From positions 186,001 to 250,000 of the IMG/VR virus record IMGVR_UViG_3300023202_000383: a DNA stretch of 64,000 nucleotides; one strand, written 5' to 3'. Shown piece after piece: positions 32,534 through 62,508 of this stretch (the first letter of the stretch is position 1; every line of letters begins with the position of its first letter). Both the position numbers and the translations under genes were made by a program. The notes under the pieces are model-generated. The model did not search any database, was not told the DNA's origin, and was given only the letters and a program-made list of their open reading frames with translations.

Positions 32534-33028
32534 TCACAGCTTACGCATCTTACAATGTTTGATCAAATTGATGTTGTCCGGTGTCGTCAGAAAGGTCCCG
32601 TCTTTATTGACAAAACCTATCATATCTTCTCCGAGGACACTCGGGATCTTGAAAGCTTCTTTGGGATTTGCCACGATTGTGCAATGCTCAAATGATGCAT
32701 CAGACCCGACCGTCAAGCAGCAGCATTTATGCTTGTCAGAACCCCTCGGAGGTCTAGAAGCACTGCTCAGCATAATCAGGTCGACGTTATCGATATCGGT
32801 AGAATGGACCCCGTCTCTGCATTCCCACACGAAGGTCTTTTTATAAAGTGATCTAACGCCTTTTGGCGTCTTGCCGGGTGGATATATCGATACGTTTTCG
32901 AACGGGGTACCAGCAATAACCGCTAATTTAGCTTTTGTCTTTTTCATTTCTTTATATTTTCTCTCGGACATAAACATTTTCTTTTGCGACGTGGCGTGAC
33001 ACAACCGTTCATGGAGCCGATAAGTCAC
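32534..33028 (-). CDS. Hypothetical protein
   Basis: 164 aa ORF; true start probably a later ATG. Confidence 0.55.
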   Translation of the reverse strand: MTYRLHERLCHATSQKKMFMSERKYKEMKKTKAKLAVIAGTPFENVSIYPPGKTPKGVRSLYKKTFVWECRDGVHSTDIDNVDLIMLSSASRPPRGSDKHKCCCLTVGSDASFEHCTIVANPKEAFKIPSVLGEDMIGFVNKDGTFLTTPDNINLIKHCKMRKL

Positions 33029-33331
33029 ATGCTCGCTAGAGTTTTGGTTCTTGAGTTAGAGCTTATGGCATCAGTATATTCTGTCAATGAGAAAGATGGA
33101 GTCGGAATATATACTTCGCATACGACGAGTGTACCAGCTAAAATATGCCGTGTGAGCGACAGCAAATGCGTTGTTTGGTCTTATCATCATAATATATCAA
33201 CACCAATAGAGCAGATGGTGTTTGAATATTCTATAGAGGACCCGTCGTTTGATCCTCAGAAATTGGCTAATGACGTCTGCAAGTTCGCTTTTGAAGCTGC
33301 GTGCATCGGGAAAGGTGTCCGAGAACAGTGA
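32984..33331 (+). CDS. Hypothetical, family A paralogue
   Basis: YSIEDPSFDPQKLANDV; true start probably an ATG after the upstream motif. Confidence 0.65.
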   Translation: MRRGVTQPFMEPISHMLARVLVLELELMASVYSVNEKDGVGIYTSHTTSVPAKICRVSDSKCVVWSYHHNISTPIEQMVFEYSIEDPSFDPQKLANDVCKFAFEAACIGKGVREQ

Positions 33332-33412
33332 GGTTATGATTGCTTTAGTACGTAAAACTTCACGCAGTATAAGGAATCTAACCTATGTTTGAGAGAAATA
33401 ATGGTTTTTCTC

Positions 33413-33430
33413 GCCGCTCGCGGGAGACAC
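33413..33430 (+). promoter_or_regulatory. Recurring GC-rich upstream motif (T-tract-GCCGC-N6-9-GAGACAC/GCGCCAC)
   Basis: Similar copies at 32986, 35590, 39451, 44715, 54492, 59181 and 62435, all near the 5' end of + strand genes. Confidence 0.55.
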
Positions 33431-33472
33431 ACTCCGGTGAACAAACGTCTTTCCCACTAACCGGAGACAATC

Positions 33473-34366
33473 ATGACGAATACGCAGAAGAGAAATCAGC
33501 TCGTTGGGCTGATGACCGAAGGTGCCAATAAGTTCAGTACCTTGGGTTTCATCGCGTGGTGGAACGTACGAGGTGTCGAGGTCACTCGTGACGAGTTGAT
33601 CGAGATGCTCAAGAAGGCCGACCTCGATCCGAAGTATGCTCGTAAGCATAACTATCGCAGCTCCTTTATCCGGGCACTCAAGGCCTTGGAAGAGCAGCGG
33701 ATTATCAGACTGGTTGAGGAGAACCCGACCAGAATGATCTATCAGTTCACCAGCGAAGTCAAGATCGAGGACCCCGATTCGCCGCACTTCCTGTACACTC
33801 CCGAAACCAATGTGGTCGTCGACAAGACCGAGTACTTCGAGTCTCAGGACTTCGAGAAGGCTCTGATTAAGTGCGACGAACAATTTAAGCAGCATCTGGT
33901 CGATCTGTTCAACAAGGAGCGAGAGACGTACCGATCCGCTGATGTGACTCGGTACGTCAAGAGCATCTTCTCTGACAGTGCCGATATTATTCCGCTTCGG
34001 CAGCAGGGTAGCGTCTACTTCGTGCCGTACGTCTTTAAGGATGTGGTCGACAAGGTCCATAGCCTGCTGACTCAACTCGGCAGTTCCCTGGAGTTCGCAC
34101 CGCTTCCCGATGTTGGTTCGAGCCGTTCGATGGTCGGCAATGTCGTGGTCGATATGATCTCTGCCGATCTGGACAAGATCAAGGAAGAGGTCCATGAGAC
34201 TCAGACCCAATCGATCAAACGTGCCGATCGGTGGACCGAGTACCGTAACAACCAGCTGAACGAAATCGAGGCGAGACTCGATTTCTACGCCGATGCGGTC
34301 GACGATGATGTCCTGGAGAACCTCAAGCAGCGCGTTTCGGAAGTTCGCGTTGAATTGAACAGGTAA
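33473..34366 (+). CDS. DUF6744-like protein (recalled family), GC-rich codon usage
   Basis: GFIAWWNV....V..DEL..ML..A.LD...Y.SSFIRAL...GSVYFVP; GGAG RBS. Confidence 0.6.
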   Translation: MTNTQKRNQLVGLMTEGANKFSTLGFIAWWNVRGVEVTRDELIEMLKKADLDPKYARKHNYRSSFIRALKALEEQRIIRLVEENPTRMIYQFTSEVKIEDPDSPHFLYTPETNVVVDKTEYFESQDFEKALIKCDEQFKQHLVDLFNKERETYRSADVTRYVKSIFSDSADIIPLRQQGSVYFVPYVFKDVVDKVHSLLTQLGSSLEFAPLPDVGSSRSMVGNVVVDMISADLDKIKEEVHETQTQSIKRADRWTEYRNNQLNEIEARLDFYADAVDDDVLENLKQRVSEVRVELNR

Positions 34367-34588
34367 CCATGACTGACGAGTAGCTTGAAGGTGCATGCAC
34401 CACCTTCAAAGGGATTGGCGGGTACCTACCGGAGCACCCGCCCTAACGACTTTCCGAACGGTGTGTAAGCACTTAGGCGGAATTAGCGAGCCGACGCAAG
34501 TGTTTGAGGTTAGGAGCCTCACGTCTAAATGACGCGGTGAAATTCCGGAGCTAGTGCATGGGCGGTGGTGGGCGAGACGGACGGGGCG
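34367..34588 (+). ncRNA. Candidate structured non-coding RNA
   Basis: ORF-poor, GC-rich spacer with stems TTGAAGGTG/CACCTTCAA, GGCGGGT/ACCCGCC and AAGCACTT/AAGTGTTT, ending at a terminator. Confidence 0.4.
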
Positions 34589-34622
34589 GACCGGGGCGAG
34601 GAAACTCGCTCCGGTCTTTTTT
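34589..34622 (+). terminator. Rho-independent terminator
   Basis: GACCGGGGCGAG-GAAA-CTCGCTCCGGTC followed by TTTTTT. Confidence 0.85.
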
Positions 34623-34632
34623 GGAGAGAACT

Positions 34633-35580: not shown

Positions 35581-35663
35581 TGGTTTTTCGCCGCGCGGCT
35601 GTGCGCCACGATCGATAGCAGCCAGCGGGTGGCTGTCAAACATAAAAGTGGAGATAGAACAAT

Positions 35664-36014
35664 ATGGGACAGCACTTCTACGTACCGAGCAACATCGTCG
35701 AGAAGGAACTTGAGGTCAGCAAAGAGCTTGACCCCATCAAGAAACCCGATCTGACTCCGAAGCAGGTGATCGAAGAGCAGATTCTGGGGATTACCGGCAG
35801 ACCCAACAATTTCGACAAAGTCGTATTCAAGGAGTTGTGGTCCGACGAAGCCGGTACGCGGTTCCGCGTCAATGTCTTCACTAAGACGTACGAGAAAGAC
35901 AGCGCCATGCCCGACATTTCGATGGTTGACAGCTATTTCGTCCTGTTCAACAGCGAAATGGGATCGGTTGACCAGATCAGCCCATCTCCGAGACTGAAAT
36001 TCCGCAATAATTGA
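35664..36014 (+). CDS. Hypothetical protein, GC-rich codon usage
   Basis: 116 aa, GGAG RBS, preceded by the upstream motif. Confidence 0.75.
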   Translation: MGQHFYVPSNIVEKELEVSKELDPIKKPDLTPKQVIEEQILGITGRPNNFDKVVFKELWSDEAGTRFRVNVFTKTYEKDSAMPDISMVDSYFVLFNSEMGSVDQISPSPRLKFRNN

Positions 36015-36331
36015 TGAAGAACGTCATGCAAGCCATGGCGGAAGAGCTAGTCCGTAGACTATGCTATTGCGAGCTGGTGCGCAAAAAGTGGCCCTCAAAC
36101 GGATTCCCACACTATAGATGGAATAGTGGTATTGGTGGAGAGCATGGTCTCATTGAGGTAATATATTCTGATTGTATATTGGCTGAATTTTGGCCAGACT
36201 GCTCCACAGTATGGTATCCGAAGTCCAAAGGATGGCATTATATTCTTGAGGACCCAAATTTCGAGCCAGAATTTCTGGTGTACGAAATGTATGCGTACTT
36301 GGTTGCACACTACCTACTAGGGTCTCGATGA
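36011..36331 (+). CDS. Hypothetical, family A paralogue
   Basis: YILEDPNFEPEFLVYEM. Confidence 0.65.
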   Translation: MMKNVMQAMAEELVRRLCYCELVRKKWPSNGFPHYRWNSGIGGEHGLIEVIYSDCILAEFWPDCSTVWYPKSKGWHYILEDPNFEPEFLVYEMYAYLVAHYLLGSR

Positions 36332-38415
36332 AGTTACCAGAAAACATAGAAGCTAGAGACTACCAGCTCCAGATCATATCCGAAACCATTGAAGCAATCG
36401 AGCGTGGGCATAAGTCTATTTTGATAGTCTCGCCAACTGGATCGGGCAAGACTATTACGGGGCACTTACTTCTGCATGAGCTTTACAATAGATATGGTTA
36501 CAATGCTGGGTGGACCTCAATGCGTAGGTTCCTTTGGCGTCAAGCACGTAGATCGAATGAAAAATTGACGAAGTTTCCGCATGTCCGATATTTTAGTCTA
36601 TTTGATAAAGACTTTCCAACCGACGTCGATGTGCGAGTGGAAGATGAGTGCCTTCCGGCACCCACTATAATAGAAACGGAAGATGGGCTAAAAACGATTA
36701 GAGAAATCGTTGATTCAAAATATTCTGGAAGAGTGCTTTCATTCAACGGAACAAACAATGAATGGTGTGAGGTTACTAATTGGTATAAAAGAGACAACGA
36801 TAAAACTTGGATTAATCCAACAAGAAACAACCCAAATAAATACACTGACACATTCAAGCAATTGTGGTGTACACCAGATCATACATTATTCTATATTGAT
36901 GATCCATTAAATCCTATCATAAAACAAATTGCAGCCAAAGACATTGCCGGAAAGTATCTTGTTGCAAAACCAACAAATTATAAACGAAACAACATAAATC
37001 CTTACTATAATAGTGATCAGTTATCGGTCATAATTGGATCTGTCTTGGGTGATGGCTCGGTTGGCAAGTCTGGCAGAGTAAGACTGCAGCATTGCAGTAT
37101 GCAATCTGAATATTTAGACTGGAAAGCCAAAATACTTGGTGGCAATAAATCAAGACATGATAAATGGTCTGGATATAGATGGAAGCACGACGGATTTAGA
37201 GACAATTTTGCCGTAACTAGCCAGACATCTAGAATAAGAGATATATGCTACATAAATAATCAAAAGAAAATCACAAACGACATAGTTGAAATGGCGGATA
37301 TAAAGACTGTTGCTATATGGTATATGGATGATGGGAGTATTAGTAGAAAACGTGCAGTGTTCCATACTGAAGGATTCGACAAAGAATCGGTAATAAACTG
37401 CCAGAAAATATTGGCAAAGTTCGACATAAATAGCAAAATAGCTAAGTCGAAAACAAAATACCATATTATACAATTAAATGTAGAAAATACTAAGAAAATG
37501 ATGGGATTAATATCAAAATACAGATGCTCATCTATGAATTATAAATTTACAGAACATCATGACTTATATAAATGGGACAGCAAAAAATTAGACTTCGGAA
37601 CAATCAAAATAAATCATATTAATAATAAACAAGGTAGGGCGATAAAAGGTAGGAAATTGAAGTATGACATAGAAGTCAAAAAGAATCATAACTTTTATGC
37701 CAATGGATATTTAGTACACAATTGCCACCATAGCGCATGCAATACGTCTATTTGGCAGCGCGAGACCATCGACCCGGCAATTGACATTGGTTTGACGGCT
37801 ACTAACTATCGTACTGACAAGCTGAAGTTGGCTTATAGTAAGGTTGTCAACGGCCCAGATATAGATTTTCTTGTGAATAACGGCTTCTTGAGTCCTTATC
37901 ACTTCTATGCGCTCAGGCAGAGATGGAATGCAGACAACATAGCACGCTTGTATTTGTCGGACGCTGCCAGGTGGGGCAAAAGTGTGATCTTCTTATCCAA
38001 GGTGGACAACTGCTATAAAGCAATGAATATTTTGTCCGATGCTGGAATAAAATGTGATGTTGTGCATGCTAATAGCGACCAAGAGAACCAGATCGAAGCG
38101 TTTATCAACAATGACTTGCAAGTTTTGCTGAACGTCTTTGTTCTTACAGAAGGTTTCGACGTACCAGACTTGAAGACCGTATTTGTTAGATCTGCATCAG
38201 AGGGGCCGACAATACAGATGTGTGGACGAGTGCTTCGTACTCATGGCAGCAAAAAATATGCGCAAATAGTCCAGCCGTATTCTGCCAAGCATCCTTTCAC
38301 CAATATAGCTGAGGCATCAAAGAAATTGGTGCAGAAGAGAGGCAATTGGGATGAAGTTTCTACGAATTCCTTAGTAGAGATAGCGTCTAAAGCTATATTT
38401 AGGAGAAGATGGTGA
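36328..38415 (+). CDS. SF2 helicase (Res/UvsW-like) containing an intein
   Basis: ARDYQ, SPTGSGKT, DE|CHH after splicing, GLTAT, VLTEGFDVP, QMCGRVLR; 337 aa after splicing. Confidence 0.88.
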   Translation: MKLPENIEARDYQLQIISETIEAIERGHKSILIVSPTGSGKTITGHLLLHELYNRYGYNAGWTSMRRFLWRQARRSNEKLTKFPHVRYFSLFDKDFPTDVDVRVEDECLPAPTIIETEDGLKTIREIVDSKYSGRVLSFNGTNNEWCEVTNWYKRDNDKTWINPTRNNPNKYTDTFKQLWCTPDHTLFYIDDPLNPIIKQIAAKDIAGKYLVAKPTNYKRNNINPYYNSDQLSVIIGSVLGDGSVGKSGRVRLQHCSMQSEYLDWKAKILGGNKSRHDKWSGYRWKHDGFRDNFAVTSQTSRIRDICYINNQKKITNDIVEMADIKTVAIWYMDDGSISRKRAVFHTEGFDKESVINCQKILAKFDINSKIAKSKTKYHIIQLNVENTKKMMGLISKYRCSSMNYKFTEHHDLYKWDSKKLDFGTIKINHINNKQGRAIKGRKLKYDIEVKKNHNFYANGYLVHNCHHSACNTSIWQRETIDPAIDIGLTATNYRTDKLKLAYSKVVNGPDIDFLVNNGFLSPYHFYALRQRWNADNIARLYLSDAARWGKSVIFLSKVDNCYKAMNILSDAGIKCDVVHANSDQENQIEAFINNDLQVLLNVFVLTEGFDVPDLKTVFVRSASEGPTIQMCGRVLRTHGSKKYAQIVQPYSAKHPFTNIAEASKKLVQKRGNWDEVSTNSLVEIASKAIFRRRW
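36649..37722 (+). mobile_element. Intein with LAGLIDADG homing endonuclease (358 aa)
   Basis: Starts CLPAPT, ends NFYANGYLVHN followed by Cys; IIGSVLGDGSV and AIWYMDDGSI motifs. Confidence 0.92.
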
Positions 38416-38720
38416 TAAAGTTTAAGAACCCTAGGATCGTAAGACTTGACAATGATGGTTGGCCTACTGAAGAGCATTTAAGTGTGCCAAGCGAAGTTTA
38501 TATTTTGATGAATGGTGAAGTCATCTGGCTTGGTTGTCAGATATGCCTCCTAATTGACATAGAAAAGGCAGTATGTAAGAGATATTTAAATATGCTCAAG
38601 TGTCTAGTAAACGTAGAAGAGCATATGGGAGAGTGGGATTCGGTCAGTAGAATGCCATTAACTCAGCAAGCTTTTGAAGATGCAAAGAAGTGGCTAACTA
38701 CGCACGATTTTGCCAAGTAG
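38409..38720 (+). CDS. Hypothetical, family B-like
   Basis: IVRLDNDGWPTEEHLSVPSEVYILM. Confidence 0.6.
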   Translation: MVIKFKNPRIVRLDNDGWPTEEHLSVPSEVYILMNGEVIWLGCQICLLIDIEKAVCKRYLNMLKCLVNVEEHMGEWDSVSRMPLTQQAFEDAKKWLTTHDFAK

Positions 38721-39408
38721 GGATATCTGTGACTTCTTTGCTCATGCCGTACTCGCGGTTCTGCTTGGCCCATATTTTGACTAATTTTGAAGCCTCATAT
38801 ATTCTTATCAGTTCGTCTCTAGTTAGGCCCATTTCGAGAATTTCTCCAATCTCAGACCCCATTATGGCTGCTACTACTTTAAATGAAGCACTGGTCCTTA
38901 ATGCGCATCTATTTATTGAATTATATACCCAGCCCTTTTGATTCAACTTTTTAACCTCAGAAGCCGCGCGTACAGCCAGCCAGTCGTTGTTTTGTTTGCA
39001 GTTTCTAGCTCTTCTTTTGGCTCTTTTTACTTTTTCTGTCCGCTTTTTCGCTTCATCATGTGATATGTTATACGCGCTGTACTTAAGCACAACAGGGTAC
39101 TTCCCGAGGCTCATAGATGATTTCTTTATCGTCCCATCGGGTGCTTCGCAACTAAACACGGCTGGCCTGTAGAATAATGAGTTACCCCAGTATATTGTCA
39201 GAGGCGATTTTACCAATGTGTGTTTCAGAGTGCACCTTTTTGCAGTTACGGAATCGACAGCCCATGGTATTTCACCCGACACTACGCTCGATGATAAAAG
39301 TCCTGGATTGGCGTCTTGCCCATCGAATTCGACTAAAATCTTCTGCTCAGGATGAAGCATTTTTGCTTCATCTATATCTAAATCCGGCCCGATAGCTGAA
39401 TATATCAT
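38698..39408 (-). CDS. Hypothetical protein
   Basis: 236 aa, GGAG RBS. Confidence 0.65.
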   Translation of the reverse strand: MIYSAIGPDLDIDEAKMLHPEQKILVEFDGQDANPGLLSSSVVSGEIPWAVDSVTAKRCTLKHTLVKSPLTIYWGNSLFYRPAVFSCEAPDGTIKKSSMSLGKYPVVLKYSAYNISHDEAKKRTEKVKRAKRRARNCKQNNDWLAVRAASEVKKLNQKGWVYNSINRCALRTSASFKVVAAIMGSEIGEILEMGLTRDELIRIYEASKLVKIWAKQNREYGMSKEVTDIPTWQNRA

Positions 39409-39487
39409 CCTGTGCTCCTCTTTCTATTGTATATTTTGTCATGACTTTCAGCGCGCGGCGGCTGCGCCACGACAAGCGGAGGAAAGT

Positions 39488-40871: not shown

Positions 40872-40877
40872 GATAAT

Positions 40878-41357
40878 ATGACAATACAATATGAACCATA
40901 TGTGTTTAAGGGTGATTGGAAGCTTTGGCGTATATGCACCATGGACGTCTGCCATGTAGATAGCAATGGCTGCGTAAGTTTAGATGACATATCAGATCCA
41001 TCTAAAGACGAGTTGTGGTTTCTGATAGGCATTTTAGCCAAGCATCCTAGGCATAGGAGCAACAAGTCCTCAGTTATGACTATTGTAACTGACGGCGAAG
41101 TGTGGTATGATTGTACTATTACAAAATCTTCATTTATTGGGAAAATGACCAAAGTCGATGACAAAGGTGGGGATTTTATAATTAGTTTAGATCAATCACT
41201 ACAGCACGCTGACCTTCATGCTGATCCTATGGATCATGACAGTCCAGAAGCTTACATTATAGCTAGTAGTGTCCCTAGATTTGGATGCGGCTACGCGGAC
41301 TTGTCGCCGGAATCCAAAGAGGTAATCCAGAATGCCATCAAAGAACGATTCGGTTAA
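40878..41357 (+). CDS. Hypothetical, family B-like
   Basis: HVDSNGCVSLDDISDPSKDELWFLI. Confidence 0.65.
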   Translation: MTIQYEPYVFKGDWKLWRICTMDVCHVDSNGCVSLDDISDPSKDELWFLIGILAKHPRHRSNKSSVMTIVTDGEVWYDCTITKSSFIGKMTKVDDKGGDFIISLDQSLQHADLHADPMDHDSPEAYIIASSVPRFGCGYADLSPESKEVIQNAIKERFG

Positions 41358-41892
41358 CGTGTCGTACATACCATTATTGGATGTGGACCACTCGACACCA
41401 ATTGACTATGCGCCGCATATTCTTCGCACAATCCAAGAAGGCGTTGGTCTAATAAGATACATATTTACATATGGTGGCGGGAAGATAGTGTTGTGTTTAA
41501 ATAGGGCAAGAGACATCTATGACCATATGGATAAATGGTGTGACGGCGATATAGAAAATACGATGGTGATAAATGCCGAAAATGGCGACAATCGCTTTTC
41601 TCTATGTATATTCCCCGTACAAGTTAATATTGGCGAAGATATAGTTGTCCCACTCCGGTATCAATCTACTAAAGGGCATGAAGCGCCAGAGTTGGGTCAA
41701 AAAGTCAAAGTTGGCATCGCTGATTCTAGTGGGTTGCCGCAGAAATATTTAATGCCTAGTGATATATACTGGCTTGGGAATCTCCGTACTTCTAGCGTGA
41801 AGTTCGACGGCGAATCGGTCCAATCTAAGATCTTATCATTGCTTCGCGACGTTGGCGGCGACACCAGCGAGAGAGGAACGAACGATGGCTAA
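41332..41892 (+). CDS. Hypothetical protein
   Basis: 186 aa coupled ORF. Confidence 0.6.
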   Translation: MPSKNDSVNVSYIPLLDVDHSTPIDYAPHILRTIQEGVGLIRYIFTYGGGKIVLCLNRARDIYDHMDKWCDGDIENTMVINAENGDNRFSLCIFPVQVNIGEDIVVPLRYQSTKGHEAPELGQKVKVGIADSSGLPQKYLMPSDIYWLGNLRTSSVKFDGESVQSKILSLLRDVGGDTSERGTNDG

Positions 41893-44025: not shown

Positions 44026-44210
44026 AAATTATAATGGCTGGGACTGAATTGGACTTTGGTGCAAGCCCAACAAAGGGCGCAAAGGTCATAATCAACGACA
44101 TCGATATGAAAGATCTTATCATTGAAGTTGAAGCTGATAATGCCGAAGTTGTTATAGTTGATGGAATAATCACTATTAGAAAGAAACAAAGCGAGAATAT
44201 TAAGCTATAG
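44022..44210 (+). CDS. Small hypothetical protein
   Basis: 62 aa coupled ORF. Confidence 0.55.
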   Translation: MKIIMAGTELDFGASPTKGAKVIINDIDMKDLIIEVEADNAEVVIVDGIITIRKKQSENIKL

Positions 44211-44687
44211 ATTCTTAATTCTGTCGGCTGTATATTCCAATAGTGATAAGATGCCTGGTGATTTATAAGATTCTATACTTACACCAGCCATTTTAAGCAT
44301 ATTGAGCGTCGCTTGGAAGTCATTGTCATGCACACACACGCACTCTTGGGCGCTATATACTATTCTAGATATTCCCTTTTGAGCAAGCATTTTGGCGCAC
44401 GTTGAGCATGGCGGTCCGGTAACATAAGCAGTACCGCCAGTCAATAGGCCGTTGCTGAACATAATGGCATTCTGCTCAGCATGCACTAACCACATATACT
44501 TCTCTGGTCTAGTGCCAGGGATTTTAGAATCATCTATTCCTTGAATTGATCCGTTGTACCCGACGCCCAATATTCTGTGCTGGTCGTCAGTTATGACACA
44601 GCCATTCTTGTGTTCATGAGGATCAGAAGATCTGGCAGATACAAGAAACGCCATTGCTATAAAGTAATCATCCCATTCTGGCTTCAT
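44205..44687 (-). CDS. dCMP (deoxycytidylate) deaminase
   Basis: WDDYFIAMA.LVSARS.D, HAEQNAI, PCSTCAK; start ATG 44687. Confidence 0.93.
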   Translation of the reverse strand: MKPEWDDYFIAMAFLVSARSSDPHEHKNGCVITDDQHRILGVGYNGSIQGIDDSKIPGTRPEKYMWLVHAEQNAIMFSNGLLTGGTAYVTGPPCSTCAKMLAQKGISRIVYSAQECVCVHDNDFQATLNMLKMAGVSIESYKSPGILSLLEYTADRIKNL

Positions 44688-44760
44688 ATTGTACAAATAC
44701 CTCACGTTTTGATTGCCAGCAGCGGCGCGGCGAGACACGCGGTAGCGGAGGAACGCACGT

Positions 44761-49995: not shown

Positions 49996-50138
49996 TTTAA
50001 ATCCTCTATGTGTATTATACATTATATTTGAACGAGGGGACATCGAGGCAGAAGCATCACAATTTTTGCTGAAACGTCGCAGCGCGACAAGACGCTGCAA
50101 GAAGTCTCTCACCGCGTCTCAAAGATAAGGAGAAGCAA

Positions 50139-51371
50139 ATGCGGGTGAAGCAACTTAAAGAAGCGACCATGTTGTGTCGCGAAGCTGGCGTCACAGCTTT
50201 CGTATGGGGCCACCGTGGCGTTGGTAAGTCCTCGATCATTCGGCAGGTCTGCGATGAACACCAGATGGGATGCATCGACCTTCGATGCAGCCAGCTGGAA
50301 GCGTCCGACCTCCGTGGTCTCCCCGACCGGATCGACGGTCGTACGGTGTTCTGTCCTCCGGAAGACATGCCGCGTGGCGGTCTGTCGTTCGAGGAATACG
50401 CCAAGCGACTGGAAGACGATCCGGATAACGCCTACAAGCTGGCAGTCGAACTGCAGCCGCAGATCAACAACGGCATCCTGTTCCTGGACGAGTTGAATCG
50501 TGCACAAGATGACGTGATTCAGGCTGTGTTCCAGCTGGTTCTGGACCGCCGCCTGGGTCAGTACGCCCTGCCTCCGGGCTGGTCGGTGGTCGTCGCGGGC
50601 AACTACATGGAAGGTTACATGACCAACGGGTTCACCGATGCAGCCTTCATCGATCGATTCTGCCACATGCAGCTGTCGGTCGGTGAGTCGACCCTCGAAG
50701 AGTGGGTCAACTACATGTCCAAGGTCCACGAGCAGGGTGCGACGCAGGTGATCGAATTCGCCTCGCAGAATGTCAAGCATCTCGACGGCGAAGTCAAGGG
50801 TGAGATGGGCTTCTCGGTCCAACCCTCCCGACGTTCGTGGGAAGCGGTTGTCCGTGTCGAAGCCGCCTTCAAGGAATCCAAGCACTCCTACTCCGAAGAT
50901 ACCCGCCACGCTGTTTTGGCTGGTTTGCTCGGATGGGAACTGGCGACGTCCTATTCGCGATACAACTGCCCGGTCCGTCCAGACATGGTCATCAAGCAGG
51001 GTGTCAAGTCCCTCGAAGGCAAGCTGGCCAAGCTCAACCGCAACCAGCTGACCGGTCTGATGTGGGGCTTGGCTTCCAAGCTCAAGAACAAGGTGGACGA
51101 AGAGAAGGAAGGCAAGATCGCACTGGACTTCGTCCGGTGGATGTGCAAGCACGCGAACGACAAGGATATCGCAGTGGCGTTCTGTAACGTCATGGTCGGC
51201 GGTGACGAGTTCGTCCGCGAGCGGCACGCGATGATCTCCAACCCGAACATCGCCAACCTGTTCAAGAAGTACCGCAACAAGGATGCCAAGAAGACGTTCA
51301 TCGACCGTCTGACGGACGATCCGGAACTGCAGGAGCTGGTGTCCCGAACCGCCTGGGGCAAGGAGAAGTAA
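50139..51371 (+). CDS. MoxR-like AAA+ ATPase
   Basis: GHRGVGKS, SQLEASDLRGLP, ILFLDELNRA, VVVAGN, AFIDRF, SRRSWE; GC-rich codons; AGGAG RBS. Confidence 0.9.
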   Translation: MRVKQLKEATMLCREAGVTAFVWGHRGVGKSSIIRQVCDEHQMGCIDLRCSQLEASDLRGLPDRIDGRTVFCPPEDMPRGGLSFEEYAKRLEDDPDNAYKLAVELQPQINNGILFLDELNRAQDDVIQAVFQLVLDRRLGQYALPPGWSVVVAGNYMEGYMTNGFTDAAFIDRFCHMQLSVGESTLEEWVNYMSKVHEQGATQVIEFASQNVKHLDGEVKGEMGFSVQPSRRSWEAVVRVEAAFKESKHSYSEDTRHAVLAGLLGWELATSYSRYNCPVRPDMVIKQGVKSLEGKLAKLNRNQLTGLMWGLASKLKNKVDEEKEGKIALDFVRWMCKHANDKDIAVAFCNVMVGGDEFVRERHAMISNPNIANLFKKYRNKDAKKTFIDRLTDDPELQELVSRTAWGKEK

Positions 51372-51377
51372 CCCGCA

Positions 51378-53090: not shown

Positions 53091-53105
53091 TCAGGAGGTT
53101 GTGTA

Positions 53106-54482: not shown

Positions 54483-54518
54483 GTTTTTGTTGCCGCCGAG
54501 CAGAGACACCTTCGACAG

Positions 54519-54974: not shown

Positions 54975-55014
54975 CATCAGAATTGGGATTTAACTCTAAA
55001 ACAAAACGAGGAGA

Positions 55015-56237: not shown

Positions 56238-56254
56238 ATTAATGGACGCTACTA

Positions 56255-57222: not shown

Positions 57223-57478
57223 CCACAGACAGACGGAGGACGATCATGTGCGCCTGCTGGTAGAGCGGCTGTGTCCGCCAGACCTTGCGTTCAGTGTGAC
57301 ACGGTATGACGTTGGCCGGTGGCACATCGTAATCGCGAGTGCGCCCGAGCCGCCTCATTACGTCATCGAGCGAGTAGTAAATGTTCGCGGGGCTGTTTTT
57401 CCAGAAGGAATCATCACGCGTAACGTTGACGAAATGGTGACGCACATCCTCGAAAGGATTGCCCAACATGCCGAATGA
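57212..57478 (+). CDS. Hypothetical protein, GC-rich
   Basis: 88 aa, GAGG RBS. Confidence 0.6.
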   Translation: MPTDHRQTEDDHVRLLVERLCPPDLAFSVTRYDVGRWHIVIASAPEPPHYVIERVVNVRGAVFPEGIITRNVDEMVTHILERIAQHAE

Positions 57479-57520
57479 CCCCAGACACCTTGCAACAACC
57501 AGAGATTGAGCCACAGCAGC

Positions 57521-59023
57521 TTACCGCTCGTAGACAAATCTTAACTTCTTGCTACCCCATACCTTCACATAGCCATTTGTTTCAGCGTATTCACGCTCTT
57601 TCATTTTCATCTTCACAGCACGCTGATAGAGCGTTTTCTTATGCATTGTCCACCCATTCTCATCAGTATACCAATAACTTGGTGGTACATCTCCGTCGGG
57701 CTTGAAATTCAACGACTTATACACAGCACCATCATGATTAAAAGTGGTATCACAATACGATATTATTAACTTGTACTTATCTGGCAGTTTTTTTAGACAC
57801 CTGCTAACAAACCACGACGCGAAATTCTTCTTCTGATAGCGAGGGTGAATACATAACCTAGATAATTCGCGGCATTCTTTCTTCTTATATCTGCCAGTCC
57901 TAATATTGTGACGTACCAACGGTGAAAAAACGCAAACAGCAATCAACTCTTCTTCAAGATAGGCACCATAACAAATTCCGCCTCGACCAGCATCGGATAG
58001 GTAATGATATTTCGAAAGAAGAAGCCTGTATTCGCTAGCTGGACAGTCATTAATTTCTACATTATTGAAATCGTATTCGACAGTATTCAGTTTAGTAATT
58101 CCGAGCCAATATTTGAGCAATTCGACCACTTTATTATAATTGTGAAATTCATGCTCCCAAATGCATTTCAATTCGTACTGATTTGGGAAGTTATTTGCGA
58201 CGTATGATGCCTTCCGTTTATCATTAGCATGCCCTCGATCTGTAGAATGCCAGTATTCGCCTTGGCATTCTATAAGGAGATCTGGTGCGTTCTGCCTAGG
58301 GATGACGCAATCAAAGCTATATGGCCCGATTTTGGTCTGTAAATCGTCTTGTTTGCTATTGTGCTCTCTGTAATAAGAAATATTTAAGTCGTCTAGGATA
58401 GAATAGAGTGTTTCTTGTATAGATGAGACCTTTGGCATATTATCTCTAGCTAGAGACAAGGACTCGCAGATTTTGGCTCTATATTCGGGATTCTCCCATG
58501 ACTTTTTAGTTGCTTCTGATATCTTACGCCTATATTCTTGATTCCCCCACGCCTCTTTGGATACCTGCCCCAAAATTTCTGTCATTTTGTCTCTGTATTT
58601 CCCATCCAACCACCTCTTTTTGCCGAGTTCTGACATCTTTTGTTTAAATTCTGGGGTAACTTTCTTGCGGTTAATCTCTGTCATTCTTTCAGCGAAATCG
58701 TCACTCTGCCTAAAAGCACTCATCCTGTCTCGTAATTCAGGATCATTCCAAATTTCTTTGCTATTGGTTACAATTTTGTTTCTATACCTATCATCCTTCC
58801 ATGCTTCTTTTGCTCCTTTCCTAGATGCTTTTCTTTTCTCTGGATCGTTTGCTACACACTTGGCGCATTCCCATGGTATTTGATTTCTTATAACCTCGGA
58901 TTTCTTGCGAATGGATTTTGTGCCCTCGCTGCCGCAATTATCACATTCAACGACTACCTTTGGCCTATGTCCAGATAGATCTATTCTATTAAATTTTTCT
59001 AGCGTCTTATTCCAATTTATCAT
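57521..59023 (-). CDS. Hef-like endonuclease (NUMOD3-like repeats + Vsr/DUF559-like + GNAT/Mom-like)
   Basis: YSFDC...LLIECQGEYWH; YHYL..AGRGG...ELSRLCIHPRYQKKNFASWFV...IISYCD..FNHDGAVYK. Confidence 0.75.
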   Translation of the reverse strand: MINWNKTLEKFNRIDLSGHRPKVVVECDNCGSEGTKSIRKKSEVIRNQIPWECAKCVANDPEKRKASRKGAKEAWKDDRYRNKIVTNSKEIWNDPELRDRMSAFRQSDDFAERMTEINRKKVTPEFKQKMSELGKKRWLDGKYRDKMTEILGQVSKEAWGNQEYRRKISEATKKSWENPEYRAKICESLSLARDNMPKVSSIQETLYSILDDLNISYYREHNSKQDDLQTKIGPYSFDCVIPRQNAPDLLIECQGEYWHSTDRGHANDKRKASYVANNFPNQYELKCIWEHEFHNYNKVVELLKYWLGITKLNTVEYDFNNVEINDCPASEYRLLLSKYHYLSDAGRGGICYGAYLEEELIAVCVFSPLVRHNIRTGRYKKKECRELSRLCIHPRYQKKNFASWFVSRCLKKLPDKYKLIISYCDTTFNHDGAVYKSLNFKPDGDVPPSYWYTDENGWTMHKKTLYQRAVKMKMKEREYAETNGYVKVWGSKKLRFVYER

Positions 59024-59239
59024 AATTTATTTTTGAGCCGTGATATGGCAATATGGTTATTGTCTTTTAAATACAATATCAGTTGTTGCGCGACAACAAA
59101 CGCTTCACAGCAAGCTAGAAATGCGTCAACACATCAAAAATAACTCATTGGATTCGCGAAGCCGTTTTGTGCCAATTGTTGCCGCCATGCTGCAGCGACA
59201 CAGCAGCGTGTGAGGGAACGTCTTTCTGGAGAACATGCT

Positions 59240-60868
59240 ATGATGACACCTGAGGAAAAGTTGGTAGCTGCACGATGTCGTTTGATGACACGTGAGCCAT
59301 GGTACGGGCATATGGCCATGATGATCACGTGGAAGAAGTCCGACATGAATTGGGTCGATGATGAAGCGGCCCGATCGATCGGCATTAAGATCGCCAGCAC
59401 CGGCGAGATTACTGCTTACTGGTATCAGGATTGGGTTGAGCGGATGTCGCTCAAGCAGATCTACGGTACTATCGAACACATGATCAATCACCTGGTTCGC
59501 CTGCACCCGGTTCGGGCTGGTGAGCATGAGAAGGCTCCGTGGAACATCGCGACCGACATGGCCGTAAATGGTTCTGCCAACAGCCCCCACATCGGATATA
59601 AGGACGAGAACGGCAAGACCGTCCTCCCTTGCTCATATGATGTGTCCAAGGGAAGCGACACCTGGACAATCCCCAACTACGACGACGCTTTGGTGTTCGC
59701 AGACAAGAAGGGGATCGGCGTCGACAATGTTAAGCCGCACGGCGACAGTCTCGTGTTCGTGCCCAATGACTGGCCTAGTGACGAATCAGCCGAATTCTAC
59801 TACGAGAAGTTGATCGAGCAATTCGGTGACGATGGCCAGCAGGGCCAGCAGGGCCAGCAGTGCGATGGTGAAGGCCAGGACCAATGCCAAACGTGCGGTG
59901 GCAGCGGGCAAGCTCCCGACGACGAAGATGGCGACGAAGACCAGCAGGGCCAAGGCCAAGGTCAGGGTCAGGATGATGACCAGCAGGGCCAGGGCCAAGG
60001 CCAAGGTCAGGGTCAGGATGATGACCAGCAGGGCCAGGGTGGTGGCGGTGGCCAACCCCAGGGCGAATGCAGCGACAGCAGCGGTGAAAGTGATGGTCAG
60101 GGAAGCGGCAGCCCGTGCCCCGATTGTCAGGGAACCGGCAAGGAAGGCGGTCAAAGCGGCGGCAACGGCCAGGCCAAGCACAACTACGGCCCATTCCAGA
60201 ATAACGCTGTCGACGACCACAGCACGTGGACACAGTCCGATATCAGCCACGACGAGGCACGGCAGCTGGTCCATGATATGGTCAAGGAAGCGACCGACAA
60301 GAGCCAGGGTCACACACCCGGTCACTTGGCACAGGCGATCGACGAACTCAAGAAACCGATCGTCCGGTGGCGTGAAATCCTGCGTCAGATCATCGGCACG
60401 CACGTTGGCAACCGTCGCAAGACGTATGCCCGACGCAACCGCCGATATGATATCTGGGGTATCAAGGGCATCAGCCATCACGCAGCCGCAACCGTGTCGG
60501 TGATCATCGACACGTCCGGATCAATCGGAACCAAGGAACTGGAACAGTTCTTCGGTGAAATCGAGGCGATCAGTTACCGTGCCAAGGTCAACGTTCTGCA
60601 GTGGGACCACGCATTCCAGGGCTTCGACCAGTACCGCCGAGGTGACTGGAAGAAGATCACTGCTAATGGACGTGGGGGCACGGATATGGCAGCCCCGGTC
60701 AAGTGGTTAGAAGAGAATGGCCAGGTCGCTGATCTGCAGATTATGCTGACCGATGGCTATTGCAATTGGCCCGCGCCACGTGAGTATCCGATGGTGTTCT
60801 GCATCACGACCGACAATACTTCGGAACCTGAGTGGGGTGTGTCGATCCGCATGAAGATCACTGAGTGA
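59240..60868 (+). CDS. Zincin-like (DUF2201-type) + vWA domain protein, MoxR partner
   Basis: EHMINH..RLH, WNIATDMAVN, SAEFYY, DDHSTW, IDTSGSI MIDAS, GRGGTD, IMLTDGY; ATG 59240. Confidence 0.88.
   Translation: MMTPEEKLVAARCRLMTREPWYGHMAMMITWKKSDMNWVDDEAARSIGIKIASTGEITAYWYQDWVERMSLKQIYGTIEHMINHLVRLHPVRAGEHEKAPWNIATDMAVNGSANSPHIGYKDENGKTVLPCSYDVSKGSDTWTIPNYDDALVFADKKGIGVDNVKPHGDSLVFVPNDWPSDESAEFYYEKLIEQFGDDGQQGQQGQQCDGEGQDQCQTCGGSGQAPDDEDGDEDQQGQGQGQGQDDDQQGQGQGQGQGQDDDQQGQGGGGGQPQGECSDSSGESDGQGSGSPCPDCQGTGKEGGQSGGNGQAKHNYGPFQNNAVDDHSTWTQSDISHDEARQLVHDMVKEATDKSQGHTPGHLAQAIDELKKPIVRWREILRQIIGTHVGNRRKTYARRNRRYDIWGIKGISHHAAATVSVIIDTSGSIGTKELEQFFGEIEAISYRAKVNVLQWDHAFQGFDQYRRGDWKKITANGRGGTDMAAPVKWLEENGQVADLQIMLTDGYCNWPAPREYPMVFCITTDNTSEPEWGVSIRMKITE
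59939..60040 (+). repeat. Tandem GQ/DDDQQGQGQ coding repeats
   Basis: gaccagcagggcc...ggtcagggtcaggatgat units occur 2-3 times. Confidence 0.85.
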
Positions 60869-60910
60869 TATCCATGTGATGACCGCAGCCATGTCGGTCA
60901 AATATATTTC

Positions 60911-62428
60911 ATGATCGATTGGGAAGCAAGCAAAGCTGAGTTCGGAACCACCATGGGTCTAAAAGGCAATAGACCCATGGTGGTTGTTTTATGTGACAAG
61001 TGCAAGTCTAAAGGATCTATTCGGATTCGCAACAAATCTCTGATCAAAAAGACTGGCGACCGCACATGGCTGTGTAGATCATGCGTGAATAACCAACCTA
61101 ACAAGATAGCAAAACTTAAGAATGCTTCTAAAAAATTATGGGAAAATGATAAGTATAGATCAAAAAATTTAAGCTCAGTCAGAAGTGCAGAAAATCGCAA
61201 AAAGCTTAGCGACAATTGGTATAAAAATATGAAATCAATTGTCGCCAGTGACGAATATAAATCAAAGCAAAGAAAATCATCAATCAAATCATGGCGTGAT
61301 AGTAAGTATGCAAGCAAGATTATCAAGTCATCAACAGAGATGTGGAATAATGCTTCTTTACGTGACAAGATGTTGTCATCTAGAAGAACTGATAAATATA
61401 GAGAGAATCAGCGTATAAAGGCAATAGAACGGTGGCAAGACCCTAATTATATAAAGAAGCAGGACTCTGCAAAAGCTAGAGCGGTTAGATCACCAGAGAA
61501 CTTGGCGAAATTGCGAGCCAACCAGAAAAAAGTGTCATCAATACAAAATATGTTGTATTCAATCCTCGATGATTTAGAAGTTAAATATTATAGAGAATAC
61601 AATGATAAAATAGATGATCACGAGGTCAAGATTGGTCCATATAACTTCGACTGTTTGGTGCCACGTGACAACAAGCCAGACTTGCTAATAGAATGTCAGG
61701 GCGAATACTGGCATTCTATTAGAGAAGGCAGCGATAAAGCTAAAGCATCATATATATCAAACAACCACAGCGATAAGTATGAGCTTAAATATATATGGGA
61801 GCATGAATTTCATAATAAGAATAGAGTTGTTGAGCTTGTTAAATATTGGTTAGGCATTGCCGCGATTGACTCAATAGAATTCGATTTTGATTCAGTTGAG
61901 ATAAGAAAATGTCCACCAAAAGATTATAAACTTTTGCTTGGCAAATATCATTATCTTCCAACAGCAGGTCGCGGTGGCATCGCTTTTGGTGCATATTTGG
62001 AGTCCGGGTTAATAGCTGTATGTATTTTTTCTCCGATGCCTCGGCAAAACATGCCATATAATAATAAATCGCATAGAGAATTGTCTAGGTTATGTATTCA
62101 CCCTCGCTACCAGAAGAAGAATTTTGCGTCGTGGTTTGTGTCGCGGTGTATCAAATTGCTACCGACAAAATACAAAACAATAATATCATATTGTGATACT
62201 ACATTCAACCATGATGGGGCGGTCTATAAAGCATGCAATTTCAAATTGGATGGTGAAGTTAAGCCAGATTATTGGTATGCTAGCAAAAGCGGCTGGATTA
62301 TGCATAAAAGAACAATGTATGGGCATGCAACAAAGATGAAGAAAAATGAATCCGATTATGCCAAAGAGATGGGCTACAAGAAAATATGGGGCAGCAAGAA
62401 ATTAAGATTTGTTTTTGACAGATCATGA
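60911..62428 (+). CDS. Hef-like endonuclease, close paralogue of 57521..59023
   Basis: Same domain order; YNFDC...LLIECQGEYWH; ELSRLCIHPRYQKKNFASWFV identical. Confidence 0.75.
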   Translation: MIDWEASKAEFGTTMGLKGNRPMVVVLCDKCKSKGSIRIRNKSLIKKTGDRTWLCRSCVNNQPNKIAKLKNASKKLWENDKYRSKNLSSVRSAENRKKLSDNWYKNMKSIVASDEYKSKQRKSSIKSWRDSKYASKIIKSSTEMWNNASLRDKMLSSRRTDKYRENQRIKAIERWQDPNYIKKQDSAKARAVRSPENLAKLRANQKKVSSIQNMLYSILDDLEVKYYREYNDKIDDHEVKIGPYNFDCLVPRDNKPDLLIECQGEYWHSIREGSDKAKASYISNNHSDKYELKYIWEHEFHNKNRVVELVKYWLGIAAIDSIEFDFDSVEIRKCPPKDYKLLLGKYHYLPTAGRGGIAFGAYLESGLIAVCIFSPMPRQNMPYNNKSHRELSRLCIHPRYQKKNFASWFVSRCIKLLPTKYKTIISYCDTTFNHDGAVYKACNFKLDGEVKPDYWYASKSGWIMHKRTMYGHATKMKKNESDYAKEMGYKKIWGSKKLRFVFDRS

Positions 62429-62508
62429 TTTCTTGCTGCAACACGCTGTGTCACAGCAAAGTAAGGCCAGAGGAAAAGAGTGATGATTGATTACCCCGAA
62501 GGAGAGAA

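What the first reader, a model, noticed from the sequence alone, without database searches (positions are those of the whole stretch)
32986..62454. Recurring GC-rich bipartite motif upstream of + strand accessory genes: candidate novel early promoter
Seen: T-tract, then GC(C/T/G)GC or GCGAC, then 5-10 nt, then GAGACAC/GCGACAC/GCGCCAC/GTGACAC/GTCAC. Copies start at 32986, 33413, 35590, 39451, 44715, 54492, 59181 and 62435, with weaker ones at 50068 and 59088. All are on the + strand, near gene starts, in otherwise AT-rich spacers. It does not match the sigma70 or sigma54 consensus. Inference: a promoter for a phage RNAP or alternative sigma factor, or an activator site marking early transcription units.
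Basis: partly seen in the sequence, partly recalled or inferred. Interest (0 to 1): 0.65.

Follow-up and report, generated by a model that had tools for sequence, protein, structure and literature searches.

The report
Conserved bipartite jumbo-phage promoter motif
Eleven copies of a two-part DNA signal with a fixed 17-base GC-rich gap sit in front of rightward genes of an uncultured giant phage and recur about 50 times in a related complete phage genome, so it is very probably a phage-specific promoter class, but what reads it is unknown.

Summary
The anatomy needs correcting. The conserved parts are a T-rich or TTG hexamer preceded by purines, then exactly 17 bp of roughly 75% G+C spacer with no fixed sequence, then G-C-G-R-CAC-n-A. 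A pyrimidine-G step follows 9 nt after CAC and looks like a transcription start.

Scoring matrices trained only on other phage contigs rank the window's sites as the best hits in the whole 256-kb genome: 8 hits, all on the + strand, against about 0.3-0.5 expected. A matrix trained only on the window finds about 50 sites in a complete 341-kb relative. Two-block hits peak sharply at a 17-bp spacer (68, against 5-15 at other spacings). Sites lie before protein genes and tRNA genes, and at all five places where a + strand unit starts after a - strand gene. They show no excess hairpin potential.

My best reading is a promoter class with sigma70-family geometry, read by host RNA polymerase, marking the non-structural (early or middle) arm of the genome. 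No phage RNA polymerase was detected. This phage encodes a sigma factor, but the complete relative with the clearest motif has none, so the reader protein is unidentified. No RNA data could be obtained.

The parts
32977..33011 (+). Hexamer TTTTCT at 32977-32982, 17-nt spacer, CACAAC at 33000-33005. The predicted start at 33011 coincides with the A of an ATG that has no Shine-Dalgarno sequence, so the mRNA may be leaderless.
   Evidence: (14.8 bits with the G001-trained matrix)
33405..33439 (+). Hexamer TTTTTC, then CACACT at 33428-33433; predicted start G at 33439. It lies upstream of the DUF6744-domain gene at 33473-34366.
   Evidence: 16.9 bits
35584..35618 (+). Hexamer TTTTTC, then CACGAT at 35607-35612; predicted start G at 35618. 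It lies upstream of ORF 35664-36014 and the intein-bearing helicase operon.
   Evidence: 20.9 bits; 21.9 bits
39445..39479 (+). Hexamer CTTTCA, then CACGAC at 39468-39473; predicted start at 39479, at the 5' edge of a GGAGG. It sits at a divergent junction after the - strand ORF 38698-39408.
   Evidence: (20.2 bits)
41839..41873 (+). Hexamer TTGCTT, then CACCAG at 41862-41867; predicted start G at 41873, 12 nt before ATG 41885. It lies inside the 3' end of ORF 41332-41892.
   Evidence: 19.6 bits, third best hit in the genome; 16.7 bits
44713..44747 (+). Hexamer TTGCCA, then CACGCG at 44736-44741; predicted start G at 44747, the first G of a GGAGG. It lies upstream of the ligase-like gene at 44761-45408, at a divergent junction.
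   Evidence: (22.5 bits, best hit in the genome)
50063..50097 (+). Hexamer TTTTTG, then GACAAG at 50086-50091 (G in place of the first C); predicted start G at 50097. It lies upstream of the AAA ATPase gene at 50139-51371, at a divergent junction.
   Evidence: (16.0 bits)
54484..54518 (+). Hexamer TTTTTG, then CACCTT at 54507-54512; predicted start G at 54518, one base before ATG 54519, which has no Shine-Dalgarno sequence. It keeps the geometry but scores poorly with the G001-trained matrix.
59083..59117 (+). Hexamer TTGTTG, then CACAGC at 59106-59111; predicted start A at 59117. It is the upstream member of a tandem pair.
   Evidence: 8.4 bits; 5.3 bits
59176..59210 (+). Hexamer TTGTTG, then CACAGC at 59199-59204; predicted start G at 59210. 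It lies upstream of the DUF2201 VWA/metallopeptidase gene (called start 59240), at a divergent junction after the - strand ORF 57521-59023.
   Evidence: 16.0 bits; 26.0 bits, best hit
62429..62463 (+). Hexamer TTTCTT, then CACAGC at 62452-62457; predicted start A at 62463. It lies upstream of ORF 62509-62895.
   Evidence: (10.4 bits)

Best explanation
The sites are core promoters of one phage-specific class.

Layout. An A/T-rich upstream stretch is followed by a -35-like hexamer (TTG in relatives; T-rich or TTG in this phage). Then comes a rigid 17-bp spacer that is G+C-rich with no fixed sequence. An extended -10-like block follows (C-G-R-C-A-C-a-A-c, with an invariant A), then about 5 nt, then a pyrimidine-G where transcription probably starts.

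What reads it. This layout is that of sigma70-family holoenzymes. I therefore infer that host RNA polymerase reads the sites, carrying a sigma-type specificity subunit whose -35 reading is ordinary and whose -10 reading is altered.

What it does. The class drives the rightward non-structural arm of the genome: small ORFs, a helicase, a ligase-like gene, an ATPase, VWA and Mom-like genes. In relatives it also drives tRNA genes. I take it to be an early or middle temporal class.

What is open. The specificity factor is not identified. The phage's own sigma is a candidate, but a complete relative that has the motif and no sigma argues against it.

Shown: the motif, its geometry, its enrichment, its conservation and its placement. 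Inferred: promoter function, the start-site position, use of host polymerase, and the temporal class.
For: - Rigid spacing. Two-block hits in G001 number 68 at a 17-bp spacer, against 5-15 at spacers 13-21 (reversed-genome null 4-7). In G000 the count is 10 at 17, against 0-7 elsewhere.
- Cross-validation. Matrices trained on other genomes recover the window's sites as the top hits, and the reverse also holds. Nulls are 0.3-0.5 against 8 observed.
- About 50 sites above 18 bits in the complete relative G001, against 0 in the null.
- Clade distribution. The motif is present in G000, G001, L009 and L010, and at null level in G002, G003, G004 and L011.
- Placement. Sites occupy all five + strand unit starts that follow - strand genes in the window. 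In relatives they lie before tRNA genes and 15-54 nt before start codons.
- Start-site signature, pooled over 72 sites. The A of CAC is 72/72. The eighth base after CAC is a pyrimidine in 53/72 and the ninth a purine in 66/72 (G in 55). ATGs without a Shine-Dalgarno sequence pile up 8-9 nt after CAC. GGAG starts at that same position in several sites. One tRNA begins 9 nt after the CAT that occupies the CAC position at its site.
- Canonical sigma70-type promoter matches in the region are no more frequent than in shuffles (43 vs 38.3; 46 vs 38.7).
- No phage RNA polymerase domains were found.
- The motif is absent from the structural modules. The motif arm of G000 is syntenic with the motif arm of G001.
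Against: - Start sites and promoter activity are therefore inferred only.
- The -10-like block lacks the T at the last hexamer position that canonical sigma70-type recognition needs.
- A GC-rich spacer is atypical for bacterial promoters.
- In this phage the -35-like hexamer is often only T-rich (TTTTTC, TTTCTT) rather than TTG.
- At G001 43580 a plausible Shine-Dalgarno sequence lies upstream of the predicted start.
- The host is unknown, so its sigma repertoire cannot be inspected.
- Two large ORFs of G000 (925 and 1,288 aa) remain unannotated, and the T7-type RNAP search had a silent control. A very divergent phage polymerase is therefore not excluded.
Confidence: 0.62

Rival explanations
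1. The motif is the promoter class of the phage-encoded sigma factor. This is G000:163793-164569, 258 aa, with regions 2 and 4. It would replace the host sigma on host core polymerase.
For: - The phage encodes a sigma70-family protein with regions 2 and 4.
- The bipartite 17-bp geometry with a TTG -35 fits a sigma with an ordinary region 4 and a divergent region 2. The region 2 hit is weak, at 22.7 bits.
- The motif-bearing contig L009 also encodes a sigma.
Against: - The complete relative G001 (direct terminal repeats, 100% complete) has about 50 sites but no sigma. This holds by Pfam six-frame search, by phmmer with six phage sigmas and five homologues from the protein search, and by a custom profile. 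The syntenic slot next to Cpn60 holds a different gene.
- G002, G003 and G005 encode sigmas. G002 and G003 lack the motif genome-wide; G005 lacks it in the one 20-kb locus scanned.
- Phage sigmas of known systems usually drive middle or late genes, including structural ones, whereas this motif avoids the structural modules.
Confidence: 0.17
2. The motif is an operator or activator-binding site (or two half-sites) for a phage DNA-binding protein that sits next to promoters, rather than the core promoter itself. The real -10 and start would lie elsewhere.
For: - A rigid two-block spacing of about two helical turns is also typical of dimeric regulators.
- The left block and the reverse complement of the right block share a weak T-n-G resemblance (my reading).
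- The GC-rich spacer is unusual for a core promoter.
Against: - The motif is strictly directional with the downstream gene.
- No other conserved promoter-like element accompanies it. Information content outside the two blocks and the pyrimidine-G step is low.
- Canonical sigma70 matches are not enriched nearby.
- The fixed distance to leaderless-looking ATGs, GGAG starts and a tRNA 5' end fits a start site set by the motif itself.
Confidence: 0.1
3. The motif acts at the RNA or single-strand level. It could be a 5'-UTR structure, a processing site or translational operator, or an N4-type hairpin promoter extruded from supercoiled DNA.
For: Several sites contain short inverted repeats, for example at window 59181, 62435 and 50068. 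The element is G+C-rich.
Against: - There is no excess folding over shuffles across 72 sites: mean z is -0.2 and only 4% fall below -2.
- The inverted repeats have no common register.
- Sites precede tRNA genes, which rules out a translational operator.
- No Rfam family matched.
- No giant virion-polymerase-sized ORF exists.
- The conserved T-rich/TTG block and the exact 17-bp spacing are DNA-duplex features.
Confidence: 0.04
4. The recurrence is a compositional or duplication artefact: chance GC-rich islands, or copies of one duplicated segment.
For: Some G001 sites are exact duplicates (101424/102765 and 106423/107071). G+C-rich islands can inflate matrix scores.
Against: - Spacer sequences differ between sites, while only the two blocks and the spacing are kept.
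- A block shuffle that preserves local composition gives 0.5 hits against 8 observed.
- Other GC-rich runs in the genome are mostly coding and lack the flanks.
- The motif is conserved in genomes with about 50% protein identity and different G+C content.
Confidence: 0.02

Closest known systems
Bacterial sigma70-family promoters with an extended -10 (TTGACA, 17 bp, TGnTATAAT); established knowledge
   Same: Both have two blocks with an optimum spacer of 17 bp. Both have TTG at the start of the upstream hexamer and a G two bases before the downstream hexamer. Both have an invariant A at hexamer position 2, A at position 5, and a purine start a few bases downstream preceded by a pyrimidine. Both have an A/T-rich stretch upstream.
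   Different: Every T of TGnTATAAT is a C here: C 74%, G 67%, R, C 96%, A 100%, C 90%, a, A 82%, c. The critical last T is therefore missing. The spacer is about 75% G+C in a 41% G+C genome. The hexamer-to-start distance is about 5 nt. Canonical matches are not enriched in the region.
Heat-shock sigma32 (RpoH) promoters, TTGAAA, 13-14 nt, CCCCATnT; recalled from the literature, not tested here
   Same: Both have a TTG-type -35. Both have a C/G-rich run immediately before a C-A core in the -10. In both, about 17 nt separate the -35 hexamer from that C-A core.
   Different: The core here is CAC-n-A, not CAT-n-T. The whole spacer is GC-rich, not just the 3-4 bases before the core. No link to heat shock was shown, and the host and its RpoH are unknown.
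Phage T4 middle promoters (MotA box at -30 plus a sigma70 -10, with AsiA/MotA sigma appropriation); established knowledge
   Same: Both are phage-specific promoter classes for non-structural genes and tRNA genes, read by host polymerase redirected by phage factors. Both combine an upstream phage-specific box with a downstream element.
   Different: No AsiA or MotA C-terminal domain was found in G000 or G001. The downstream element is not TAnnnT. The upstream block sits at -35 with a 17-bp spacer, rather than being a -30 box.
Promoters of phage-encoded sigma factors (SPO1 gp28 and gp33/34; sigma homologues of RNAP-lacking jumbo phages, PMC13282480)
   Same: This phage encodes a sigma with regions 2 and 4. 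The motif has the bipartite layout such sigmas read.
   Different: Motif and sigma do not co-occur across relatives. G001 has the motif and no sigma; G002, G003 and G005 have a sigma and no motif where scanned.
Promoters of phage RNA polymerases (T7/SP6 23-bp promoters, N4 hairpin promoters, phiKZ/AR9 multisubunit RNAP promoters; PMC8244752 and PMC5312081 listed)
   Same: All are recurrent phage-specific motifs upstream of early genes. The GTGACAC seen at one site happens to resemble part of the SP6 promoter (recalled from memory).
   Different: No polymerase gene was detected. There is no continuous conserved 20-23-mer, no hairpin, and no AT-rich or TATG-type consensus.

Membership tests
sigma70-family bipartite promoter (architecture) | Two conserved blocks separated by a spacer of 17 +/- 1 bp | tested here: met
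   Spacing scan: G001 gives 68 hits at 17 against 5-15 at spacers 13-21. G000 gives 10 at 17 against 0-7. All 11 window sites share the same register.
sigma70-family bipartite promoter (architecture) | Upstream hexamer beginning with TTG (-35 element) | tested here: inconclusive
   TTG is strongly conserved in G001, L009 and L010. In the window it is TTG at 4 of 11 sites and TTT/CTT at the others.
sigma70-family bipartite promoter (architecture) | Purine start site 5-9 nt after the downstream hexamer, preceded by a pyrimidine | tested here: met
   At sequence level only. The ninth base after CAC is a purine in 66/72 sites (G in 55) and the eighth a pyrimidine in 53/72. No RNA data were available.
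housekeeping sigma70/sigmaA promoter (consensus membership) | -10 hexamer TAnnnT, with A at position 2 and T at position 6 | tested here: not met
   A at position 2 is 72/72. Position 1 is C in 69/72, position 3 is C in 65/72, and position 6 is not T (T in 14/72). The consensus scan found no enrichment.
sigma54 promoter | GG at -24 and GC at -12: TGGCAC, 5 nt, TTGC on the same strand, in that order | tested here: not met
   Here the TTG(C) block lies 17 nt upstream of the CAC block, which is the reverse order and the wrong spacing.
T7/SP6-type single-subunit RNAP promoter | A phage-encoded T7-like RNAP and a continuous conserved promoter of about 20-23 bp ending at the start site | tested here: not met
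   The spacer is not conserved in sequence. PF00940 gave no hit but its control was silent, so that search is uninformative. None of the annotated ORFs of 600 aa or more is a polymerase. Two remain unannotated.
N4-type hairpin promoter | A 5-7 bp stem with a 3-nt loop at fixed register, and a giant virion RNAP | tested here: not met
   Mean folding z is -0.2 over 72 sites. The largest ORF is about 1,290-1,440 aa.
phiKZ/AR9-type multisubunit phage RNAP promoter | Phage beta/beta'-like subunits | tested here: not met
   There are no PF00562 or PF00623 hits in G000 (nor PF00623 in complete G001), with positive controls in 14/14 genomes. Very divergent subunits could escape these models.
T4 middle promoter (sigma appropriation) | AsiA and MotA homologues; a MotA box at -30 plus a TAnnnT -10 | tested here: not met
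   PF09010 and PF09158 are absent from G000 and G001. The -10 is not TAnnnT.
promoter class of the phage's own sigma | Co-occurrence of the motif and the sigma gene across related genomes | tested here: not met
   Motif with sigma: G000, L009. Motif without sigma: G001 (complete). Sigma without motif: G002 and G003 (whole genomes), and G005 (one 20-kb locus only).
any promoter | Primary transcript 5' ends at the predicted positions | not testable with these tools

The most novel reading that the evidence does not exclude
The -10-like block is the bacterial extended -10 consensus with every thymine written as cytosine: CGRCACAAC against TGnTATAAT. It sits behind a GC-rich spacer, in phages that carry several Mom-like and other nucleotide or DNA-modification genes.

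The boldest reading that the evidence does not exclude has two forms. One is that these promoters are kept silent for the ordinary host holoenzyme and become readable only through a phage-directed change, meaning cytosine modification or deamination within the element. The other is that a non-homologous specificity factor re-tunes sigma region 2/3 from T to C. Either would be a new way for a virus to time its genes. It would also explain how the complete relative manages without any sigma or polymerase gene.
Probability: 0.07. Interest if true: 0.9.

Novelty: new variant of a known kind. Interest (0 to 1): 0.6.

Why it matters
Most giant phages known only from metagenomes have no mapped regulatory signals. 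This work defines a high-information promoter-like motif with predicted start sites in one clade. It has about 11 sites in this phage and about 50 in a complete relative.

The motif partitions these genomes into a motif-bearing non-structural arm and a motif-free structural part. It has the layout of a sigma70-type promoter, but with a C-for-T -10 block and a GC-rich spacer.

The complete relative lacks any recognisable sigma, anti-sigma, activator or polymerase. The motif therefore points to an unidentified way of directing host RNA polymerase. It also gives a concrete DNA probe for finding the factor, through pull-down, in vitro transcription, or co-occurrence mining.

More practically, it allows transcription-unit annotation, including probable leaderless mRNAs, in related metagenomic phages.

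Tried and rejected
- A home-made EM motif search on the 120 nt upstream of each gene drifted to coding periodicity and was dropped.
- Upstream k-mer enrichment mostly recovered Shine-Dalgarno sequences and AT-rich words, not this regional motif.
- Anchoring on the T/GC boundary suggested a variable 10-17 nt gap. That was an artefact of the wrong anchor; re-anchoring on CAC gave the exact 17-nt spacer.
- A megablast of the region against cultured phages found nothing. The nearest cultured relatives are distant: DUF2201 at 28% identity and tail sheath at 35-40%.
- Single-protein locus searches in IMG/VR found no relatives. A literal motif pattern scan of IMG/VR gave 4 single hits, probably chance.
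- Rfam found only tRNAs.
- The idea that CAC itself is the start site came from a distant contig, L011, where a tRNA begins right after GACAC. I dropped it because that site has a 29-nt spacer and L011 scores at null level.
- I read the upstream YAR-TTG as a possible -10, and also as a Bacteroidetes-type TAnnTTTG. I rejected both: there is no partner block upstream, information is concentrated in TTG and CAC, and Shine-Dalgarno use is strong.
- The hairpin/N4 idea was rejected.
- Searches for AsiA, MotA, and beta and beta' domains were negative.
- A search for clade-specific candidate factors took G000 ORFs that have a G001 homologue but none in G002-G004. It gave 98 ORFs, many spurious. Ten plausible ones showed no sigma-like protein. 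One 337-aa protein (G000:66249-67259) has a TnsA-like domain and weak helix-turn-helix hits, which is not convincing.
- Host identification via genome contigs failed.
- Language-model look-alikes for the two unannotated large ORFs gave only weak tail-protein leads or nothing.

Full report
**Context**

The window is G000:186001-250000 of a 256,507-bp IMG/VR virus record (41% G+C, CheckV 70%). The same sequence sits on a 332-kb JGI contig. It is a jumbo myovirus. It has a tail sheath, baseplate wedge, intein-bearing large terminase, portal, UvsX-like recombinase, ribonucleotide reductase, Cpn60 and many tRNAs. It has no close cultured relative. Genes use strong Shine-Dalgarno sequences.

**Checking the observation**

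All ten sites are present as written. A strict regular expression gave five hits in 256 kb, all on the + strand and all between window 32982 and 59177, with none on the other strand.

Aligning on CAC showed a common register for every site. A purine is followed by a hexamer (TTTTTC, TTTTTG, TTGTTG, TTGCCA and similar), then exactly 17 nt, then CAC, usually inside G-C/A-G-A/C-CAC.

An eleventh site turned up at 41839, and another beyond the window at G000:253638.

**Relatives**

The DUF2201 protein downstream of site 59176 has homologues of 45-51% identity on large metagenomic contigs. Intergenic regions of three of these carry the same two blocks with the same 17-nt spacing: L010, L009, and L017 (part of G001).

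I fetched the complete relative G001 (341,434 bp, direct terminal repeats). A matrix trained only on the window's sites found many strong hits there. After refinement there were about 50 sites above 18 bits, against none in the reversed-sequence null. The consensus is aaAtannTAR-TTGYYY-N12-cGCGa-CACaAc.

Conversely, a matrix trained only on 14 sites from relatives ranked the window's sites as the best hits in the whole of G000, and so did the refined G001 matrix. Eight hits exceeded 14 bits, all on the + strand. The Markov-1 null mean was 0.3 and the null preserving local composition gave 0.5.

The motif is clade-specific. It is present in G000, G001, L009 and L010, and at null level in G002, G003, G004 and L011.

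**Geometry**

I scored the two blocks separately and varied the gap. G001 gave 68 hits at 17 bp, against 5-15 at 13-21 bp (null 4-7). G000 gave 10 at 17, against 0-7.

Across 72 pooled sites:
- The A of CAC is invariant. The bases before it are C (74%), G (67%) and R. The hexamer reads C-A-C-a-A-c.
- The eighth base after CAC is a pyrimidine in 53/72 sites. The ninth is G in 55/72 or A in 11/72.
- ATG codons without a Shine-Dalgarno sequence lie 8-9 nt after CAC at seven sites, including window 33011 and 54519.
- GGAG begins at that same position at several sites, including window 39479 (one base in), 41873 and 44747.
- In L010 a tRNA-Arg gene begins 9 nt after the CAT that sits at the CAC position of its site.

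Together these place the likely start about 9 nt after CAC, which is hexamer start + 34.

G+C is 0.31-0.45 upstream, 0.69-0.77 in the spacer and 0.5-0.6 after it. There is no excess hairpin potential: mean z is -0.2.

**Placement**

In the window, the motif sits at each of the five places where a + strand unit begins after a - strand gene. These are 32977, 39445, 44713, 50063, and the pair 59083/59176. It also lies between co-directional genes at 33405, 35584, 41839, 54484 and 62429. These junctions rest on my own simple gene calls.

In G001, most sites lie 15-54 nt before a start codon with a Shine-Dalgarno sequence, and some lie before tRNA genes.

The motif arm of G000 (218-256 kb, continuing to the end of the record) is syntenic with part of G001's motif arm (3.5-63 kb). 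The structural and replication block (G000 4-116 kb, G001 118-243 kb) has none. Downstream genes are non-structural. They include a DUF6744 protein, an intein-bearing helicase, a ligase-like protein, an AAA ATPase, a DUF2201 VWA/metallopeptidase, a Mom-like protein and many small ORFs.

Canonical sigma70-type matches in the region are at shuffle level.

**What reads it**

No beta or beta' domain was found in G000 or, for beta', in complete G001, with 14/14 positive controls. The T7-type search was uninformative because its control was silent. No ORF exceeds about 1,440 aa. AsiA and the MotA C-terminal domain are absent.

G000 encodes one sigma70-family protein with regions 2 and 4. Complete G001 has none by three methods, and the syntenic position holds another gene. 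The sigma-bearing genomes G002 and G003 lack the motif genome-wide. G005, which also has a sigma, showed none in the one 20-kb locus I scanned.

So the sigma-like geometry is clear, but the specificity factor is not identified. It could be a host sigma, an unrecognised phage factor, or in G000 the phage sigma. A comparative screen for clade-specific proteins gave no convincing candidate. The host could not be inferred. A recent review notes that RNAP-lacking jumbo phages often carry sigma homologues presumed to drive phage-specific promoters (PMC13282480). The present clade shows that such a motif can exist without one.

**Comparison with known systems**

The layout is that of sigma70-family promoters with an extended -10: TTG, 17 bp, G two bases before the hexamer, A at position 2, and a purine start. 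The differences are that every T of TGnTATAAT is a C here, the last T is missing, and the spacer is G+C-rich.

From memory, the nearest named consensus is the RpoH heat-shock type (TTGAAA, 13-14 nt, CCCCATnT). It shares the TTG, the C/G run and the C-A core. I did not test this.

The motif is not a sigma54, T7/SP6, N4, phiKZ/AR9 or T4-middle promoter by their defining features (see the membership table).

**Verdict**

- The promoter interpretation is well supported by sequence evidence, but remains unproven without RNA data.
- The phage-RNAP option is unsupported.
- The phage-sigma option is weakened.

I rate this a new variant of a known kind: a sigma-type promoter with an unusual -10 block and spacer, conserved in a clade of uncultured jumbo phages, with an unknown reader.

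**Limits**

- Gene calls are my own heuristic.
- Start sites are predictions.
- Two large ORFs remain unannotated.
- G000 is incomplete, so further sites probably lie on the unseen 76 kb of the source contig.

Noticed in passing
window 34367-34630 (+): A 264-nt G+C-rich intergenic stretch follows ORF 33473-34366 and ends in a 13-bp-stem terminator with a T-run (34588-34627). RNA fold z is -2.65. There is no Rfam match even at E <= 1. It could be a structured 3' UTR, an unknown small RNA, or a leader of the next gene (ATG about 34633).
   Followed up: partly
window 33011 and 54519: Two ATG start codons without a Shine-Dalgarno sequence lie at, or one base after, the predicted start sites of motif sites 1 and 8. 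Five similar cases occur in relatives (four in G001, one in L010). These are probably leaderless mRNAs.
   Followed up: partly
window 36328-38415 (+): A ResIII/Helicase_C helicase is interrupted by an intein with a LAGLIDADG endonuclease. Inteins also sit in the ribonucleotide reductase and probably in the terminase, UvsX-like and dUTPase/DCD genes elsewhere in the genome.
   Followed up: no
window 4439-5992 and 60911-62428 (+): Two proteins of about 500 aa have C-terminal Mom-family domains. The relative L010 has Mom-like genes on both sides of its DUF2201 gene. This suggests DNA adenine hypermodification in the clade.
   Followed up: no
window 10366-20979 (-): Nine tRNA genes lie on the - strand (Tyr, Asp, Ile, Trp, two Ala, Gln, Glu, Phe). 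No full motif lies upstream of them, but a CAATTGCGG resembling the upstream block lies 14 nt before tRNA-Ala at 12392.
   Followed up: partly
G000:163793-164569 (outside the window, locus L003:1252-2028): A phage sigma70-family gene (258 aa, regions 2 and 4, phrog_351) lies two genes upstream of Cpn60. It has no motif upstream. Its nearest homologues are only 28% identical.
   Followed up: yes
G000 genome-wide, upstream regions: The words AAATATA, TCAAATA, CAAATAT and TATAGTA are enriched upstream of genes. They may mark a second, AT-rich promoter class (late?).
   Followed up: no
G000:29700-32100 (outside the window): A coding block has many runs of at least 90% G+C in a 41% G+C genome. It could be a recent acquisition or a repetitive structural protein.
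   Followed up: no
L010:19122-19192: The related contig carries a tRNA with anticodon TTA, which would read the UAA stop codon. It is preceded by a motif site at 19064.
   Followed up: no
G001:101300-107100: A dense array of motif sites lies on both strands before 60-140-aa ORFs, including two exactly duplicated promoter-plus-leader pairs. It looks like an expanding paralogous gene cassette family.
   Followed up: no
window 44205-44687 (-): The - strand ORF that diverges from motif site 6 begins with residues that look to me like the N-terminus of a dCMP/cytidine deaminase. This is by eye only and was not checked with a family search.
   Followed up: no
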